From positions 58,838,001 through 58,902,000 of the forward strand of contig NC_134469.1 of the NCBI RefSeq assembly GCF_964194025.1: DNA of 64,000 nucleotides, in the 5' to 3' direction. The DNA is from Convolutriloba macropyga. Taxonomy: Eukaryota. The position numbers and the translations under genes are program-made. Positions 27,688 through 54,445 of the stretch are shown here, piece by piece (position 1 is the first letter of the stretch; every line of letters starts with the position of its first letter). The notes below the pieces were generated by a model, which saw only the letters and a list, made by a program, of their open reading frames with translations, was not told where the DNA came from and did not search any database.

Positions 27688-27697
27688 CTGAAAGAAT
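27688..27697 (-). promoter_or_regulatory. Unpaired 3' splice acceptor (TTCTTTCAG) 7 nt upstream of the TP53RK ATG; candidate trans-splice site
   Basis: Minus strand cgattctttcag|ataagcaATG; no strong donor in the 165-nt spacer from NDUFA2. Confidence 0.6.
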
Positions 27698-46300: not shown

Positions 46301-48899
46301 TTGTTCCGACCCCACTTGTGGGGGAGGAACTATATACTCAAATGGTTATTTTTTGTTCAGACAATTTTGGCCGATCGATATATTCATCGTAGAGAAATGT
46401 GAGTGGTATCATTAAAAAGCTCTTCCAGCGTAGAATTCAAAATTGAAAAGTTTTTTTCGAATTTCGTTTTTTCGAAGAGTTATTGAGGTTTAAAGTTTCA
46501 TGTGGACACGGGCTATTTGGTTCACTTTTAGCGTATTTTTGTTCGAATTAACATTTTTTCAAAATTACCTTTTACGCTACCAAATGCATCAATTTGGTGT
46601 TCCTAACAGACAGAAGGCAATTAAAAAGACTAATTCGGGTCTCAAAGGGAAATTAACTATCGATATTTACTTTCGAATTCTATTTGAGAGCTGGTTTTTT
46701 TAGGATAATTTTTATATTTTTTTGTTTTTTAAATCACTAAAAGAGTAGTCACCTTTCATATCGAGCTTCCGTTAATGACAAACCTCATTTACATTCCAAT
46801 GACGCCCAATGAACAGAAAAGTAGCTTTCAAGGAATCGCTCGTATTTTTTGGCTTCGACACAGTGTTGGTAATTTTTAATGAAATTTTGATTTTTAAAGT
46901 CCTATGCCATAGACACGTTGACTAGAAGTGCAATAGTCTTCCTAATGAGCATTAAGGGAACCTATCTAGTGCTTTGAGTGGACAACTAATGATTGTTAAG
47001 ACATTAAAAATAATTTTTCAAAGTCTTTGTTGAACGTAAGCCGATCTTAAACTTATTTTTGCGAACTCTAAGTCATTTTCAGTAATGAGAGTTCCACTGT
47101 AAATTGTGTTGAAACCAACATTAATCTACTGTAAATTGTGTTGAAACCAAGATTAATCTAGCTAGTTGTTTTATCTTCAATTATTTGCTTTATTTATCTT
47201 CAATTATTTGACGCAATTATATGACTTCAATGCGTCGAGATTCCATACATTTTCTTAAATTTTTGGATAATTTTATTGTAATTTAGTTTCCTTTTGGAAT
47301 CTTATCGCATAATCCTTATATTGATAGTTTCCATTGACTCAGAGAAGACGCTTAAAGAACCAAGGATAAAGTTTTCAGAGAAGCTTTTGGATTAAATGGC
47401 TTCGACGCTTTCTTCTCGCACTCTTCTTATGAAATTTTTGGTTTGTCTGTATTTGCTATTGTTTTCATAGTCATAAGACTTATTTTGATTTCTTATTGCT
47501 GACTGGTCAAAGACAAACAACATTGTCTTCGCATTGAGGCATAACGTAGCGTATTTATTGAATGTAATGTCGTTGATACTACGGGGTTTCTCAAAGATTT
47601 CGTGGTTTCAAAATATTTGGTCATATTTATTGATTTTTTGAAGTCTTATAGGTAAAAAAAGCGGAATCCTATTGTTGTTAAGAAAAAAAATGAAGATAGA
47701 AGTGCTTGATCGGAAAAATTGGTTTTTAATGGCTTCGACATTTTTGTTCTTTATGTAGTCGTGAAGTGCTGAGAGGTCTCATGAGCCTCTAATTGACAAC
47801 TGATTGAATGAATGATATTCCTCTATGCAGTTAGTTCATACCAAATAGTCTTAAAGTTTATGGTATTATTCATTTTCAATTTTTTTATTTTTTCGTTTTT
47901 ATATTTGTATTGTTTTTTGGATAGTTTTTGCTGTTCTTTCAGTCAACTTGTAACTAATTCTCATCAATCAGAGGTCCCATCCAACTGCTTGTAATTCAAA
48001 AATTAAACTTTCTATTCATATTTTGTCGTAACTGATGTTTTGTTTCTGGGGAAGATATGCGTTTTCATAAAAATTTTGTGAGTTGTCAATATTTGTTTTT
48101 TTCTCTTCTTTTACCACGTTCGCTTAACAACAGAGCCCGAATATTTTCAAACGAGGCCCAAGTGAACTTATTTAATCGTTCAGTATTATTTTAGCTCAAT
48201 TAGTATAGATTACAATTGAAATAAAAAAAACTATTTAGATAATAGCTAATGATTTTAATGGTCTCAATGATTTGGGTTTTCGCAGATTGTCTGTAATTTC
48301 ATGATCTTTCGTCCGTGTCTGGCCGTGTCTGTTGCTTAGTCTACCCAAAGACAGATTTTATCAGTTTCGTAATGATATTATAGTAAGTTTATCGAGAACT
48401 ATTTTGTTAAAAGCTAATTTTTTTAAGACAAGACGTTTGAAATAGTTTGGTATAAAAGTGTTGATAGTATTGAATTCCACCTCATTATTTTTTCTTTTTA
48501 TTTGCTACCTAGTCTTATTATGGAAAAGTGCCATCTGCTGTTTACTTACGGTGAAGGAAAATTTGTGCAGTTAAGGTTTCATCTGATTGCATTTTGACGT
48601 TGTTTACTAGTTGCTTTTACATTTAGATATCGAGTTTTTGCCGTTAATTTTTTAGTTTTGCTTATTTTGTAAACAAAATATTTTGTAAACAAAAGTCTTT
48701 TTATTGGAAGATCTTTTCAGCGCTGTTATGAGGCATGGCATTATGTAATTCAATTAGTAGTTTGGGTGTGAAACGATTTCTTAAAACTCAAACATCTATT
48801 TTTGATTATCTCTTCATTTGATTGACAATTAAGTCAAAAATGTAGATCAGCTCGGGTCGGAACTTCATGTGCGAACGCACATTAACGAGCCTCCTTGAC
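46301..48899 (-). mobile_element. Full-length HINE on the minus strand (~2.6 kb); its first ~200 bp is also present in each array unit (36941-37144, 41623-41826)
   Basis: 3' terminus ttgttccgaccccacttgtggggg at 46301; 5' terminus (reverse complement) caaggaggctcgttaatgtgcgttcgcacatgaagttccgaccc at 48854-48897. Confidence 0.85.
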
Positions 48900-49193
48900 T
48901 ATTTTGTTTTTAGTCATGAAAAACTTTCAATTCCAATTTTCCAAAACCTTCCACACGTAAACAAATTTGCTTCCAAATTCGGTAGACTTTGGCAGCTTCT
49001 TTCAAGCCAAATGCTGATGCTTTTATAACTATAATTAATTTTCAATGATTATGTTTTCTGAAAGACCGTGAACCTAAAATTTTTCCCGCGAATGAAAAAA
49101 AAATGTTTCAAATTCTAATCTATTTAGATTTTTAAAAAACAATTAGTTCCTCATTCAAAAGCAGTAATTAAATAACTGTGTATAACTTCAGTG

Positions 49194-50849
49194 TCACACA
49201 AAGCATCCATTGACTTTCTTGGCATAGGAAAAGGTTATTGTTAATGTTCCAAAGTCAGGCGACGATTCTTTCCACTCTATTAAACAAGGAACATGTTGAG
49301 TTGTAATTGGGTGTCGTCCAACGACAACTTGCGAGGAAAAGAAGGAAGGCTTCAGCTTTTGGAATTTCACTTTTCCAGAAGCATCTGCGCTTTCATTCCC
49401 GTTTTCCCATGCCTGATTCTCGTTGTTAAGAGGCGAATCGCTTGGCAACTCTGCTTCCGATTCGTCGTCGAAACATCCCTGCATCATTCTCTCTATTTTC
49501 ATTTTGCTAACTTCTATTGCACCATCTTTAGCATCCATCATGAAAAACTTCTCTAAACTCAACTTTGGACCGTATTTCTCTCTCAAATGATCGTCAGTTA
49601 AAGTCATAAAATGGTTGAAGGTTCTCGAACCTAAAATCTCCCAATGCTTCTTTTTACCTCCCTTGTATCCACTGACGGTGACAGTGGGAGCAATCGGTTT
49701 CCACTCATTGCCAAACTTTCCGATTATTCTCCTCTCTAGAGCCAAAAATATAGATGTCGGAATATGAGTTTCAATTAAAGCCTGACCTATTTTCGATTCT
49801 GTTAAGGGTTGCATAGCTTCGCGCATTAAATGAATCAAATTGCAAATGTAAAGATCAGGTGAGATCGGTATACTTGCCAAAACATTTTTGCCTATATTGA
49901 GCTCTTCTGAAGTTTCAGTTTCAAAACTTGGTTCACAGTGAATTTCTTTCAATTGTTTGTTCTCCTCCTCTTGTTCTTGAGACCAGACTTCTGTCGCATC
50001 TCCCCGGGCCTCCGCTTCCACTACATCTTGCAAGAACAGGTGGCAAAATTTGGCAGTTACTTTGATTCTCTCTCGGCAGTTGAAATCTGATAGAAAAGCG
50101 GCTAACAGAAGATAAACATGGTAGCAGACTCGAATCTGACCACAGATATCATCGTAACAACTTGTGGTTCCCGATTCCAGGAATGACTCACACGAACAGT
50201 AATATTCCTTTTTAAACAAATTGAATGAAACGAAAGATACTCCGTGAGGTTCTGTCGTAGATTTTGGACCAAACACTGCGTAAGTGGATCTGTCAATCTT
50301 TTGCACTGGTTGTGCAGAAAAATTAAAGCCAGCAGACAGCTTTTTGGCGGTGGTTAAATTGATAATTATGGATTCCGGAATTGAGGGTATTTTAGAGAAA
50401 ATGTACTCCCAGTGCAATGCAAGACATTTCGATTGCGCTGGTTTACCTTGTGCACATGAAGGCCCATGCTGACATGTTACAGGACCATTTTGTGCCGATC
50501 TCTTTGCCATACATGATGATAAGTAACAAAACACTTTAAACATGGGCACTTCGGCCCCATTGAATACATCTTGCTCCAACACTACAATGCCATATACTTC
50601 TTTGGAATCGACTTCATCTGCTACCGCAAATATTCTCTGCGAGGTATTGCCACAACAGTTCTGAAGTTCGACAACTTGTCTTTTTTGACGCGCACTACTT
50701 ACATTAGTACTACTGGACGTGTTATCTAAAATCTCGTTAATTCGACACCTTTTACATGCTTTAGCACGCATTCCCATGTACTCTTCGCATCCTGTGTTTG
50801 AACAACGTTTCAAACCTCTCAGAGTCGCTTTTGAACCTAAATGGTCCAT
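49194..50849 (-). CDS. C2orf42: C2orf42-like protein (N-terminal zf-tcix-type zinc finger, central SWIM-like CxC..CxH), intronless, 551 aa
   Basis: The N-terminus LGSKATLRGLKRCSNTGCEEYMGMRAKACKRC matches the C2orf42 LGKATLRGIRKC..G.R..SCK pattern. Also YYCSCESF..CYHVY and a C-terminal LIEW..FGTLTITFSY. Confidence 0.82.
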   Translation of the reverse strand: MDHLGSKATLRGLKRCSNTGCEEYMGMRAKACKRCRINEILDNTSSSTNVSSARQKRQVVELQNCCGNTSQRIFAVADEVDSKEVYGIVVLEQDVFNGAEVPMFKVFCYLSSCMAKRSAQNGPVTCQHGPSCAQGKPAQSKCLALHWEYIFSKIPSIPESIIINLTTAKKLSAGFNFSAQPVQKIDRSTYAVFGPKSTTEPHGVSFVSFNLFKKEYYCSCESFLESGTTSCYDDICGQIRVCYHVYLLLAAFLSDFNCRERIKVTAKFCHLFLQDVVEAEARGDATEVWSQEQEEENKQLKEIHCEPSFETETSEELNIGKNVLASIPISPDLYICNLIHLMREAMQPLTESKIGQALIETHIPTSIFLALERRIIGKFGNEWKPIAPTVTVSGYKGGKKKHWEILGSRTFNHFMTLTDDHLREKYGPKLSLEKFFMMDAKDGAIEVSKMKIERMMQGCFDDESEAELPSDSPLNNENQAWENGNESADASGKVKFQKLKPSFFSSQVVVGRHPITTQHVPCLIEWKESSPDFGTLTITFSYAKKVNGCFV

Positions 50850-50877
50850 TGAGTTTTAGGGGCTAACTATGACCTAT

Positions 50878-50888
50878 CTGAAAGAGAC
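50878..50888 (-). promoter_or_regulatory. Unpaired acceptor (TCTCTTTTCAG) 28 nt upstream of the C2orf42-like ATG; candidate trans-splice site
   Basis: Lies only 52 nt downstream of the AP5B1 stop, with no usable donor in between. Confidence 0.65.
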
Positions 50889-50930
50889 GTGGAGCATAAT
50901 TTCAATTTCATGGGTAATTTTAAAAAGAAG

Positions 50931-53777
50931 CTAGCTGAAAAAGCTACGATTGAATGTGCGATACAGATTTTCCAAAGATATCAAGAAGCTAGTAAGGAAA
51001 GGGCAAAGCTCATTGTTTGATATGACACAATGAAATATGACAAAATCATGCTGATGGATAATTTGAATGAGTAAATGGCACTCGGGAGGCAGAAATATGC
51101 CTAGTGCTATTTTAGATTCATCTTTGCCACTATTTGAAGACTGTTCCTTCATTGGAATCAAACAATCTGCGTGTAATAGTCTCTGTAGAATAGTCTTCAA
51201 ATCATCAAACTTTCCTTGATGTTCAACGCTGTAAATGAGATCAGCGGCTGAATTGTCTGCAAATTGGATCTGATCCTTGAACAAATCCCAAAGACCTTGA
51301 AACAAGTCTGGTCTCAAAGACGGGGAACAATAAAAAGGTAAACAATAGTCGTGGAACCTAACTGGAATACTGCTAACAGGGGAAGAACATGTAGTCAGTT
51401 GTTCGTCAATAGCCACACAATTCAACTTCAGGTCAAACTCTTTAACTTCGTGGACCTCAGCCTCAACTTCCAAAATTTTAGACGACTCATTCGCTAAATA
51501 ATCCAAACTCAATTTTGTGGTCTCTGGTCGAATAGAAAGGCTCGTACCAATATCAACAGTAAACTCTAGCGCGTAAAATTCAGTGGTTTCTGATTCGAGA
51601 TTTATCGACGTTTCAAAAAGCAAATGAATTGTTTGAGGCTTCTCGGTGAAGTCTAGGTACTCATTTACATCTTGAATTCTGGAGAAGAAACGCTTCACAT
51701 TCTTTGACATCAGTTTGATGTCTTCAGAATAGTACTGATTAGGGGTACTTTTCAATACGCAAATTGTGTCTAAATCAAGTAACTCACGTTCCGCTTCATA
51801 TACAACGTTTGTTGCACCGAAGAATGTACTGTTATGAGCAGCAATAAACGTTTCGAACTGTGCCTTTGAAGGACGCACATCTCTTGGCACGCTTTGAAAA
51901 AAGTGTCCTAATTTTTTTGGCGCTACTGTTGATGATAGATTAAGGTACAAGGATGCATTATCTCTCACAGCCTCGTTTCTGAAGTTGCTGACCACATATT
52001 GTAGCAAGCATATCACTTCAGGACAATAATTCTCTCTTCTTTCGGATTCCAACACATTGTGGAAGATCTCGACCAACCCATTGCCTACGTCATTCGAACC
52101 CTGGTAACATACCTCCGATAACATCAATGACTTTTCGAGTAACTCAAGGAACCCATCCAAATCGGCACTCGATTTTGAAGCAACCAACGACATCAAAGGC
52201 AAGTAGTCTGCGAAAAATGGCAGGAATTGATCGAATGAGCAGTTAGCAATCGATTCACTGAACGAACTCAAACACGAATCAGGGAAACTACTCTCGGGAC
52301 GCAGCTTCCACATACTTTTCAACAACTGCGTTATTGGAAGACAAAGAAAGGAATGCTTCGCGCACAGGTCCAGTACTATAACCTTGATTGCAGACTCGCA
52401 AGAACCGTGATACATGAAAGCTTGCAGTAGCACTCGAAATACAGCATGATGCACAAAATTTATAGCCTGTCTGTCAATTTGCTTTGTAAAGAGTTTAAGT
52501 AAGCTGAAGAAGTGGTGGTTGATTCCACAGCTCTCAACCGTATATGTGATTTCAACAAATTTGCACACTTTCTCAAGCAGCACCGCATTTCGATCGGGCA
52601 ATCTTGGTTGAAGTGTGCTCTTGGCTACGTCCAATTTTCCAAGTTTACCAACCAGAGCAGCTAATTTTAGGTACCATATATTGCTGATGTAAGACCTAAA
52701 GTTCAATCTTGCACTTTTTTCAAAGTTGTCAAGCAATTTTTGTGCAATGCTGGAAGAATTCCTGATGCAATATTGGAAAATTAGAACAGCGACAAGATTC
52801 GCGGCTAGGGAGTCAAGTTTCGAGAGATGAGTCACTGTATCTGCTAAGAGTCCTCCATCGTCAAAGAAGCCATAAAACAATTTGACTTCACTTAAGTAAC
52901 TCAACATTTGCAGCTGGACGGGTGTCTCCAGTTGGAACCATTGCTCGAAGCATAGCTTGCATATAACATTGACATCTTCGTTGTGACTAGAATATTGTCC
53001 ATTCAAGTCAAAATAAGTGAAGAAGCTACTAGCAGTTCCACAATTGAAACCCTTCAGGTCTGCTTTTGAGCCTCTGAGTAAGACATAAGTAATTCGGCGC
53101 TGGGTAAACTCGGGCGATTTAACAATACGTTTCAAAAAATTTCTGACACCCAAAATCATAAGTAGATTCCATAATTGTTTGTTGGGTCCCAAATGCGTTT
53201 TATAATCCTCGTAAAGTACACTCAAGTATGGCACCAAACAGCCAGGAATCGCCCTTTCTAGTTCTAACAAACATTGCAACACGTTGTTTTCAACCGCGTG
53301 GCCAAGAGTTTGCTTCGAATCTTGCGTAAGAAATTTGATCAACGTCTGGATCAGTGGAACTTCAAGCTTTCTTTCGCAACCAACACTTTTCTGAGAACTT
53401 ACAGTTGCACTTCTACTCCGGTCCCCTTCTGTTACCTTGATTTCATCTTGAAAAGACGTAACAACTGTCGTACACGTAATTAAATAGGCCACTAAGACAG
53501 ATGGCTTAACCACATCCGAGTTTCTTATGAGACGCTTGATAATTAATGAGATGACTTTTTCAGCCTCATCCGGGCCAGAGAGAATATCAGTGCAATATTC
53601 CCCCAAGTACTCGACGAGTCGTATCCTGCCGAAGACTGTATTGTTATCTTTTCCACCATCCTCTTGAAGTAAATACTGTAGAATGTCATTCAATAAATCT
53701 TCTTGACGATAAACTTTGGATAGTACTGAGGGAAAACTGTGTCTAGAATTCAGAATTCTTTCATAATCAATCAGCAT
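50931..53777 (-). CDS. AP5B1: AP-5 complex subunit beta-1, intronless, 948 aa
   Basis: Long helical-solenoid ORF with LQCLLELERAIPG, VRDNASLYLNL and the C-terminal GIFLPPECHLLIQI; these resemble the conserved AP5B1 segments (CLxELE..PG; RD.A.LY..L; xLPP..LLL). Confidence 0.8.
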   Translation of the reverse strand: MLIDYERILNSRHSFPSVLSKVYRQEDLLNDILQYLLQEDGGKDNNTVFGRIRLVEYLGEYCTDILSGPDEAEKVISLIIKRLIRNSDVVKPSVLVAYLITCTTVVTSFQDEIKVTEGDRSRSATVSSQKSVGCERKLEVPLIQTLIKFLTQDSKQTLGHAVENNVLQCLLELERAIPGCLVPYLSVLYEDYKTHLGPNKQLWNLLMILGVRNFLKRIVKSPEFTQRRITYVLLRGSKADLKGFNCGTASSFFTYFDLNGQYSSHNEDVNVICKLCFEQWFQLETPVQLQMLSYLSEVKLFYGFFDDGGLLADTVTHLSKLDSLAANLVAVLIFQYCIRNSSSIAQKLLDNFEKSARLNFRSYISNIWYLKLAALVGKLGKLDVAKSTLQPRLPDRNAVLLEKVCKFVEITYTVESCGINHHFFSLLKLFTKQIDRQAINFVHHAVFRVLLQAFMYHGSCESAIKVIVLDLCAKHSFLCLPITQLLKSMWKLRPESSFPDSCLSSFSESIANCSFDQFLPFFADYLPLMSLVASKSSADLDGFLELLEKSLMLSEVCYQGSNDVGNGLVEIFHNVLESERRENYCPEVICLLQYVVSNFRNEAVRDNASLYLNLSSTVAPKKLGHFFQSVPRDVRPSKAQFETFIAAHNSTFFGATNVVYEAERELLDLDTICVLKSTPNQYYSEDIKLMSKNVKRFFSRIQDVNEYLDFTEKPQTIHLLFETSINLESETTEFYALEFTVDIGTSLSIRPETTKLSLDYLANESSKILEVEAEVHEVKEFDLKLNCVAIDEQLTTCSSPVSSIPVRFHDYCLPFYCSPSLRPDLFQGLWDLFKDQIQFADNSAADLIYSVEHQGKFDDLKTILQRLLHADCLIPMKEQSSNSGKDESKIALGIFLPPECHLLIQIIHQHDFVIFHCVISNNELCPFLTSFLISLENLYRTFNRSFFS

Positions 53778-54230
53778 AATTAACGCAGTGTTGTGATCAA
53801 ATCCTAGCCTAATTTTAAACGTTTGTTAGCCACCTTCATTCTGCACAATTCATAAAATTCTAGCTTTACGTCTATTAGCTCAACTCACTGCATGCTTAGA
53901 TGTTCTACTACTGACACACGCTTAACCATGTAACTTCGAACTTCTAATTGTTCATGACAAACATTAAACTTGACAAACCAATTTAGCATTTAATGACCAC
54001 CCACAAAGACATTGCCTAATTTCAACATAAAGGCTAGCAAAGGTAGAAATCGCAAAAGTTGCCATGCATTCTATTACAACTTGAATTCTACGATGACACG
54101 AAAACAACTGACTGCTTCGAGGCCTGAATGTTGTTCTAAAAATGGACAGTGCCTGTTAGGAAAAGTTTCAATTAAACAAAATATAGCTCGCTAAGGTATT
54201 AGTTGTTGTTGGGGATTTTCTTTACAGAAA

Positions 54231-54445
54231 GGATTTCACCCCCACATCACCCCCAGTTTAACTGGTTTAACTGGGTGCCCTCACATCACCCCCAGTTTAA
54301 CTGGGTGTATATTAGTAGCAACCTCCCCCCCCCCCCTGATCCACGTGCCATATTTTTACATAATGAATTACTATGTAATGGCACGTGCTTTGTAACTGGG
54401 GGTGCATAACATAGTGGGGGGGGGGGGCACAAATGGAAAAGATCC
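54231..54445. mobile_element. MITE-like element (GGAT..ATCC ends, internal inverted repeats), related to 9221-9373
   Basis: Right end gggggcacaaatggaaaagatcc; internal cacccccagtt/aactgggggtg and cacgtgccat/atggcacgtg inverted pairs. Confidence 0.55.

What the first reader, a model, noticed from the sequence alone, without database searches (positions are those of the whole stretch)
50850..50930. AP5B1-C2orf42-like: 81-nt spacer, a second candidate operon
The AP5B1 stop is followed 52 nt later by TCTCTTTTCAG and 28 nt later by the ATG of the C2orf42-like gene. That leaves essentially no room for a 3'UTR plus promoter and no usable donor. With the first pair, four of five host genes sit in tight pairs that contain no transposons inside a TE-saturated window, implying selection on the spacing. 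Both genes are intronless here.
Basis: partly seen in the sequence, partly recalled or inferred. Interest (0 to 1): 0.7.

Follow-up and report, generated by a model that had tools for sequence, protein, structure and literature searches.

The report
Candidate two-gene operon, acoel worm
In the acoel worm Convolutriloba macropyga, two unrelated intronless genes (AP5B1 and a C2orf42-like gene) lie head to tail 81 bases apart, with a splice-acceptor site 28 bases before the second start codon; this fits a shared transcript cut up by the animal's spliced leader, but no RNA data could be reached to prove it.

Summary
Both genes are on the minus strand: AP5B1-like at 50931-53777 and C2orf42-like at 49194-50849. 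The spacer is exactly 81 nt (50850-50930). The acceptor-like motif is TCTCTTTCAG (50887-50878), one T fewer than written, and it ends 28 nt before the ATG.

The genome matches Convolutriloba macropyga by assembly size. It carries 31-nt spliced-leader (SL) RNA genes with a GT donor in 1261-bp SL/5S tandem arrays.

Support for the operon reading:
- Start and stop positions of both ORFs are conserved in other acoels.
- Both genes are single copy and intronless.
- In two other acoel assemblies the two orthologues appear to sit on one contig (129,208 and 524,132 nt).
- TTTCAG directly before a long ORF occurs only three times in the window, each time at a host gene.

No RNA could be reached. So SL addition at 50878, the AP5B1 poly(A) site and a shared transcript are all inferred.

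My reading is a plausible SL-resolved dicistronic operon (about 0.5). An internal promoter, no trans-splicing, or a shared upstream exon are not excluded. The "selection on spacing" argument from absent transposons has no statistical weight.

This scan has already noted several similar candidate operons elsewhere in this genome; this one has the shortest spacer among those shown to me.

The parts
53778..54228 (-). Single-copy upstream region of AP5B1; inferred promoter and 5'UTR of the unit
   Evidence: k-mer depth about 65x up to 54228, then a repeat. No acceptor near the ATG: the good pyrimidine-tract AG sites lie 256 nt or more upstream, with 9-11 upstream ATGs after them. Promoter function is inferred, not shown.
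50931..53777 (-). AP5B1-like gene, 948 aa, intronless, stop TAG 50933-50931
   Evidence: Pfam AP5B1_middle 42.7 bits (cut-off 24.5) and AP5B1_C 27.4 bits (cut-off 21.9). A profile search finds proteins that NCBI names AP-5 beta-1 in Ptychodera, Patiria, Branchiostoma and Antedon. Start MLIDY and the C-terminal end match the orthologue P0007. Single copy in the genome.
50850..50930 (-). 81-nt spacer between the two coding regions
   Evidence: No Rfam match, no tRNA, and folding no better than shuffles (z = -0.16). It keeps the two ORFs in the same frame but has two in-frame stops. No SNP between the sampled haplotypes from 50802 to 51203, which is not exceptional for this locus.
50919..50924 (-). 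TTTAAA, the only poly(A)-signal-like hexamer near the AP5B1 stop
   Evidence: no AATAAA or ATTAAA in the last 320 nt of AP5B1 plus the spacer; TTTAAA starts 7 nt after the stop. A role in 3' end formation is inferred only.
50895..50911 (-). Two upstream ATGs (50911-50909 and 50897-50895) that lie before the acceptor
   Evidence: Splicing at 50878 would remove both. The 28 nt after the AG hold no ATG. This fits, but does not prove, 5' end replacement.
50878..50887 (-). TCTCTTTCAG, predicted spliced-leader acceptor
   Evidence: It has the same TCTTTCAG|ATA form as the site 7 nt before the TP53RK start at 27688. Use of the site is not shown by RNA.
50850..50877 (-). Predicted 28-nt 5'UTR after leader addition
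   Evidence: An in-frame TAA at -12 bars an N-terminal extension. The ATG at 50849 coincides with the start of the orthologues P0002 and P0003.
49194..50849 (-). C2orf42-like gene, 551 aa, intronless
   Evidence: Atlas neighbours are C2orf42 clusters (score 0.94, 199 of 256 features; families PF26708 and PF14952). zf-tcix is weak here (E = 0.14) and matches 4 of 5 acoel orthologues (best E = 0.0028). Orthologues are 41-60% identical. Single copy.
48871..49193 (-). Single-copy 3' flank of the C2orf42-like gene, up to the next repeat
   Evidence: Depth about 65x down to 48871; beyond that, repeats with k-mer depth of 20,000-430,000. TTTAAA lies about 60 nt after the stop. The 3' end was not mapped.

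Best explanation
AP5B1 and the C2orf42-like gene form a two-gene spliced-leader operon. Transcription starts in the 451-nt single-copy region upstream of AP5B1 and runs through both genes. The AP5B1 message is cut and polyadenylated in the first 45 nt or so after its stop. The animal's 31-nt leader is trans-spliced onto the AG at 50878. This gives the downstream message a cap, removes two upstream ATGs and leaves a 28-nt 5'UTR.

Shown: the layout, the acceptor-like site, the SL RNA genes, and the conserved ORF ends. Indicated indirectly by matching contig lengths: linkage in two other acoels. Inferred: use of the acceptor, the poly(A) site and the shared transcript.
For: - Layout: 81-nt spacer, same strand, intronless. 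The DNA junction is confirmed by an independent contig.
- The genome has SL RNA genes: the 31-nt leader followed by GTAA, in 1261-bp repeat units with 5S rRNA. The leader is identical to the one published for S. roscoffensis, where 30.2% of genes are trans-spliced (PMC9911081).
- Acceptor TCTCTTTCAG sits 28 nt before a start codon whose position is conserved in three species. There are no ATGs after it and two before it.
- In 128 kb, the only TTTCAG sites directly before long ORFs are at this gene, NDUFA2 and TP53RK.
- AP5B1's stop position is conserved, so the spacer really is this short.
- The two orthologues sit on ENA contigs of identical length in two other acoel assemblies: 129,208 nt (S. 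roscoffensis cluster) and 524,132 nt (a distant acoel with 33% and 41% identity).
- The pair meets the working definition used for chaetognath operons, gaps under 250 bp (PMC12460157).
Against: - No RNA evidence of any kind. The four runs found behave as DNA.
- No SL-fused retrocopy of this gene in the genome.
- No canonical AATAAA near the AP5B1 stop.
- A generic acceptor is expected 0.16 times by chance in 81 nt.
- In a further 200 kb, TTTCAG before ORFs of 100 aa or more was not clearly enriched (3 seen, about 1.7 expected).
- In the species of P0002, several short contigs hold the complete downstream gene, but no AP5B1 piece was found. If those contigs are transcripts, the two genes may differ much in level.
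- Linkage in other acoels is known only as far as contigs of identical length, not to the base.
Confidence: 0.5

Rival explanations
1. The downstream gene is trans-spliced at 50878, but from its own promoter lying inside the AP5B1 3' coding region. The two genes are close neighbours, or a hybrid operon, and not one transcription unit.
For: It uses the same acceptor evidence. The possibly unequal recovery of the two genes in the short contigs of a related species would fit separate control. Internal promoters are known in C. elegans operons (my own knowledge).
Against: No TATA-like or other promoter motif was seen in the last 320 nt of AP5B1, apart from the TTTAAA at 50924. AP5B1 transcription must still run through this promoter. 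The motif scan is weak evidence either way.
Confidence: 0.2
2. Two ordinary, independently transcribed genes that happen to be close. The downstream gene starts transcription in the spacer, for example about 30 nt after the TTTAAA, and gets no leader. The acceptor-like motif is chance.
For: A generic acceptor is expected 0.16 times in 81 nt. About 70% of genes in the related S. roscoffensis are not trans-spliced. TTTAAA at 50924 could act as a TATA-like element, and a start after 50895 would also avoid the upstream ATGs.
Against: The strict motif TCTTTCAG is rare (7 in 128 kb), and two of the seven sit just before host-gene starts. An 81-nt gap between unrelated genes is unusual in a 1.18-Gb repeat-rich genome. 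Linkage appears to be kept over deep divergence.
Confidence: 0.15
3. The acceptor is a cis-splice site. A non-coding first exon upstream of AP5B1 is joined to 50878, so intronless AP5B1 lies inside the first intron of the C2orf42-like gene. The two share a promoter through alternative splicing, as in the ChAT/VAChT locus.
For: The acceptor has no donor in the spacer. The intron would be about 3 kb, close to the 2.5-kb mean reported for S. roscoffensis. AP5B1 is intronless.
Against: No such exon or donor was identified. NDUFA2 and TP53RK have the same kind of acceptor 6-7 nt before their ATGs, which is the usual look of leader sites. The leader system is present and abundant.
Confidence: 0.08

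Closest known systems
Ciona and Oikopleura (tunicate) spliced-leader operons
   Same: A single leader type. Very short or absent intercistronic regions. The downstream gene's acceptor lies just before its ATG. Unrelated housekeeping genes are paired (my own knowledge of these systems).
   Different: Here nothing is shown at the RNA level. The host genome is large and full of repeats, not compact. The spacer of 81 nt is longer than the near-zero gaps typical of Ciona.
C. elegans SL2-type operons
   Same: Co-oriented genes about 100 nt apart, with the upstream 3' end formed in the gap and the leader added at the downstream acceptor.
   Different: No second, operon-specific leader is known in acoels. 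No AAUAAA and no recognisable U-rich element in the spacer.
Chaetognath operons (Paraspadella gotoi, PMC12460157)
   Same: The operational definition is met: same-strand genes less than 250 bp apart in an animal with leader trans-splicing.
   Different: The chaetognath set was validated with leader-bearing reads. This pair was not.
S. roscoffensis spliced-leader trans-splicing (PMC9911081)
   Same: The same leader is present in this genome, there written as a 32-mer with one extra A. The orthologous gene pair appears to be on one 129-kb contig.
   Different: That paper reports trans-spliced genes but does not use the word operon. No paper in the library describes operons in acoels.
ChAT/VAChT cholinergic locus (nested gene, shared promoter, alternative cis-splicing)
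   Same: An intronless upstream gene followed by an acceptor of the next gene, with no room for a separate promoter.
   Different: No shared 5' exon was found here, and the animal has a leader system that explains the acceptor more simply.

Membership tests
Spliced-leader (SL) operon | The organism has SL RNA genes and SL trans-splicing | tested here: met
   The 31-nt leader followed by a GTAA donor, a stem-loop and a U-rich Sm-like stretch, in 1261-bp tandem units with 5S rRNA. The same leader is published for S. roscoffensis. Trans-splicing itself in this species was not observed here.
Spliced-leader (SL) operon | Two or more same-strand genes with a short intercistronic gap (under about 250 nt) | tested here: met
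   81 nt between a conserved stop and a conserved start.
Spliced-leader (SL) operon | The downstream mRNA carries the leader at an acceptor just upstream of its ATG | not testable with these tools
   An acceptor-like TCTCTTTCAG is present.
Spliced-leader (SL) operon | One promoter and a polycistronic precursor spanning both genes | not testable with these tools
   No RNA data. Only DNA contigs bridge the spacer.
Spliced-leader (SL) operon | The 3' end of the upstream mRNA is formed within the intercistronic region | tested here: inconclusive
   No AATAAA or ATTAAA. Only TTTAAA at 50924-50919.
Spliced-leader (SL) operon | Gene order and adjacency kept in relatives | tested here: inconclusive
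   The orthologues sit on contigs of identical length (129,208 and 524,132 nt) in two other acoel assemblies. Distance and orientation could not be read.
AP-5 complex subunit beta-1 (AP5B1) | Pfam AP5B1_middle and AP5B1_C above the gathering scores | tested here: met
   42.7 bits against 24.5, and 27.4 against 21.9. The N-terminal half has no Pfam match. Profile hits are named AP-5 beta-1 by NCBI.
C2orf42 family | N-terminal zf-tcix treble-clef finger (PF14952) and C2orf42_C (PF26708) | tested here: inconclusive
   zf-tcix scores 12.2 bits against a cut-off of 31.2, and matches 4 of 5 acoel orthologues with best E = 0.0028. PF26708 gave no match in the Pfam scans, and I could not check whether that copy holds it. 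The atlas's nearest clusters are C2orf42 at 0.94 with 199 shared features, which is a lead and not an alignment.

The most novel reading that the evidence does not exclude
Acoels (Xenacoelomorpha) have true spliced-leader operons, and this pair is an old one. It would have been kept since lineages whose AP5B1 proteins are now only 33% identical split. Its intercistronic region would be so short that cleavage/polyadenylation of AP5B1 and leader addition to the next gene happen within about 45 nt and are probably coupled, without a canonical AAUAAA.
Probability: 0.35. Interest if true: 0.55.

Novelty: new member of a known kind. Interest (0 to 1): 0.35.

Why it matters
Spliced-leader trans-splicing is published for one acoel, but I found no paper in the library describing operons in Xenacoelomorpha. 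That group matters for how early bilaterian genomes were organised. A proven operon here would add another animal lineage in which leader splicing goes with polycistronic transcription. It would also explain small islands of tightly paired genes in a 1.18-Gb genome swamped by transposons. For annotation, such pairs are easily merged or dropped: I found no NCBI-sourced AP5B1 protein for S. roscoffensis, although its neighbour is annotated. On its own this pair is one more unproven candidate among several already noted in this genome.

Tried and rejected
- **RNA evidence.** The look-up of sequencing runs (kind rna) gave four runs, none on record as RNA. This also blocked reading the 3613-nt Logan contig and the 129-kb and 524-kb contigs.
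- **Relatives.** The genome search has no relatives for this genome. A scan of metagenome contigs with P0002 found nothing.
- **AP5B1 fragments.** A word search with the last 420 aa of AP5B1, meant to catch fragments on short contigs, found nothing.
- **Retrocopy.** A search for an SL-fused retrocopy of the downstream gene found nothing.
- **Poly(A) signal from leader copies.** I tried to learn the signal from dispersed leader-bearing copies. There was no A-run within 1.5 kb and only short ORFs.
- **Shared spacer motif.** ATGCTC-N(4-16)-TCTTTCAGATA, seen at both downstream genes of the window, has only 3 matches in the genome, and two of them are the ones it was built from. It is not a general signal.
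- **Haplotype SNPs.** The SNP-free stretch 50802-51203 is not exceptional, since larger gaps exist in the same locus.
- **Other readings of the spacer.** Readthrough or fusion of the two ORFs is rejected because of two in-frame stops and separate orthologues with conserved ends. No structured RNA or tRNA lies in the spacer.

Full report
**What is there.**
- Both genes are on the minus strand. ORF 50931..53777 encodes 948 aa and ORF 49194..50849 encodes 551 aa.
- The stop of the first is TAG at 50933-50931 and the start of the second is ATG at 50849-50847. This leaves 81 nt, 50850-50930.
- Read on the minus strand, the spacer has 43 nt, then TCTCTTTCAG (50887-50878), then 28 nt to the ATG.
- The only GT before the AG is 9 nt from it, so the spacer holds no usable donor.
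- Two ATGs (50911 and 50897) lie before the acceptor and none after it. An in-frame TAA at -12 prevents a longer N-terminus.
- The 81 nt keep the two ORFs in the same frame, but two in-frame stops rule out a readthrough fusion.
- The spacer has no Rfam match, no tRNA and no unusual fold.

**Organism and leader.**
- The assembly has 1,175,981,408 bases. This equals the 1,175.98 Mb of the Convolutriloba macropyga genome note (PMC13650328). Earlier notes of this scan gave the same name.
- The spliced leader published for Symsagittifera roscoffensis (PMC9911081) occurs more than 2600 times here, against 0 for the reversed control.
- About 1750 copies are leader plus GT.
- A stretch fetched from contig 9 shows 1261-bp tandem units. 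Each holds the 31-nt leader, a GTAA donor, a stem-loop, a U-rich Sm-like stretch and a 5S rRNA gene on the other strand.
- So the machinery for leader trans-splicing is encoded here. In the relative, 30.2% of genes use it.

**The genes.**
- The first passes Pfam's cut-offs for AP5B1_middle and AP5B1_C. A profile search finds proteins that NCBI names AP-5 beta-1 in hemichordate, echinoderm and amphioxus genomes.
- The second has no Pfam match above threshold. zf-tcix is weak (E = 0.14) and matches four of five acoel orthologues (best E = 0.0028).
- The protein atlas places the second gene next to C2orf42 clusters (score 0.94, 199 of 256 features). I take "C2orf42-like" as likely but not proven.
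- Both genes are single copy.

**Conservation.**
- The 551-aa protein has acoel relatives of 60%, 52% (S. roscoffensis XP_063715419.1) and 41% identity. The three closest begin at the same methionine.
- AP5B1 has orthologues of 54%, 35% and 33% identity. The start (in the closest) and the C-terminal end (in all) align to within a few residues.
- So both edges of the spacer are fixed by conserved coding ends.
- The full-length proteins came from plain ORF calls on genomic contigs. If so, both genes are intronless in those species too.
- I could not read any relative's DNA. Contig lengths in the cluster tables serve as fingerprints instead.
  - A 129,208-nt contig carries a member of the S. roscoffensis C2orf42-like cluster and a member of the 54% AP5B1 cluster.
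  - A 524,132-nt contig carries the 41% C2orf42-like protein and a 33% AP5B1.
  - I estimate that two given genes share a contig of that size by chance with probability of order 1e-4 to 5e-4 in a 1-Gb genome.
- This points to old linkage. Distance and orientation remain unknown.

**Is the acceptor more than chance?**
- A loose definition (8 of 10 pyrimidines, then YAG) gives 0.16 expected sites per 81 nt. That is not significant.
- The strict form is rare: TCTTTCAG occurs 7 times and TTTCAGATA 3 times in 128 kb of both strands.
- Of 106 TTTCAG sites, only three are followed within 45 nt by a first ATG opening an ORF of 80 aa or more. They are this gene (28 nt), NDUFA2 (6 nt) and TP53RK (7 nt). 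The last two were confirmed by Pfam.
- AP5B1, the upstream gene, has no such site. Its nearest good acceptors lie 256 nt or more upstream, with 9-11 upstream ATGs after them. This fits a promoter-proximal first gene.
- Caveats: the motif was chosen after looking. A further 200 kb of the same chromosome added only one more case (3 seen among 55 ORF starts, about 1.7 expected), because it held few host genes.

**What could not be done.**
- No RNA data were reachable. The run search listed four runs, none on record as RNA.
- Laid on 48400-54300, they show flat depth of about 65x over 48871-54228. The flanking repeats reach k-mer depths of 2,400 to 430,000, so these are DNA runs.
- They do confirm the junction: one 4044-nt contig covers 48871-52914 with no difference.
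- They also show that the pair sits in a 5.36-kb single-copy island.

**Mechanism.**
- I commit to a leader-resolved dicistronic operon. A promoter lies in 53778-54228 and transcription runs through both genes. AP5B1's 3' end forms between about 50910 and 50888, perhaps directed by TTTAAA at 50924. The leader is added at 50878.
- With only 81 nt between the genes, polymerase that transcribes AP5B1 will usually enter the next gene. In an animal with an active leader system, a strong acceptor there should yield a working downstream message.
- This is inference. I give it 0.5.
- The rivals are: an internal promoter with trans-splicing (0.2); no trans-splicing, with a start in the spacer (0.15); and cis-splicing from a shared upstream exon, with AP5B1 nested in the intron (0.08).

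**On "selection on spacing".**
- The absence of transposons in 81 nt carries no weight. The flanks of 323 and 451 nt are equally free of them, and a small target is rarely hit.
- The haplotypes show no SNP between 50802 and 51203, but longer SNP-free stretches exist in the same locus.

**Literature and earlier notes.**
- The S. roscoffensis genome paper reports the leader but never uses the word operon.
- Searches for operons with acoels or Xenacoelomorpha found nothing relevant.
- The chaetognath genome paper defines candidate operons as same-strand genes under 250 bp apart, validated by at least one leader-bearing gene. This pair meets the first half of that definition.
- This scan has already flagged several similar clusters in this genome, one of them in this window. 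Among the gaps quoted in those notes (162-292 nt), this spacer is the shortest.

Noticed in passing
G000 genome-wide; examples L001-L008 (leader at locus position 1501): Besides the SL RNA genes, hundreds of dispersed exact copies of the 31-nt leader are followed by varied non-GT sequence. Three of eight loci share the leader plus the same 20 nt and then diverge. There is no A-run within 1.5 kb and only short ORFs follow. They look like DNA fossils of leader-capped RNAs, or a repeat family that carries the leader.
   Followed up: partly
L019 (G000:C9:23192600-23196600); arrays at C9 23.14-23.78 Mb and about 62.06 Mb: SL RNA genes stand in 1261-bp tandem units, each with a 5S rRNA gene on the opposite strand. 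This is the classic SL/5S linkage.
   Followed up: yes
window 27688 and 50878 (minus strand): The acceptors of the two downstream genes of the window's tight pairs share ATGCTC, then 6-13 nt, then TCTTTCAGATA. The pattern has only 3 matches in 1.18 Gb. It was built from these two sites, so it is probably coincidence, and it is not a general signal.
   Followed up: yes
window 48400-48990 and 54113-54300: The gene pair sits in a 5.36-kb single-copy island (48871-54228). The repeats on either side have summed k-mer depth of 2,400 to 430,000, against 65 for the island.
   Followed up: partly
protein clusters: The word search returned no NCBI-sourced AP5B1 protein for S. roscoffensis, although ORF calls on ENA contigs give a full 946-aa protein and the neighbouring C2orf42-like gene is annotated (XP_063715419.1, isoform X1). 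This may be an annotation gap at a tight pair.
   Followed up: no
window 53839-53841 and 53778-53838 (minus strand): An 11-codon upstream ORF (ATG at 53841) lies just after a weak acceptor (ttgtgcag, ending 53842) and ends 27 nt before the AP5B1 start.
   Followed up: no
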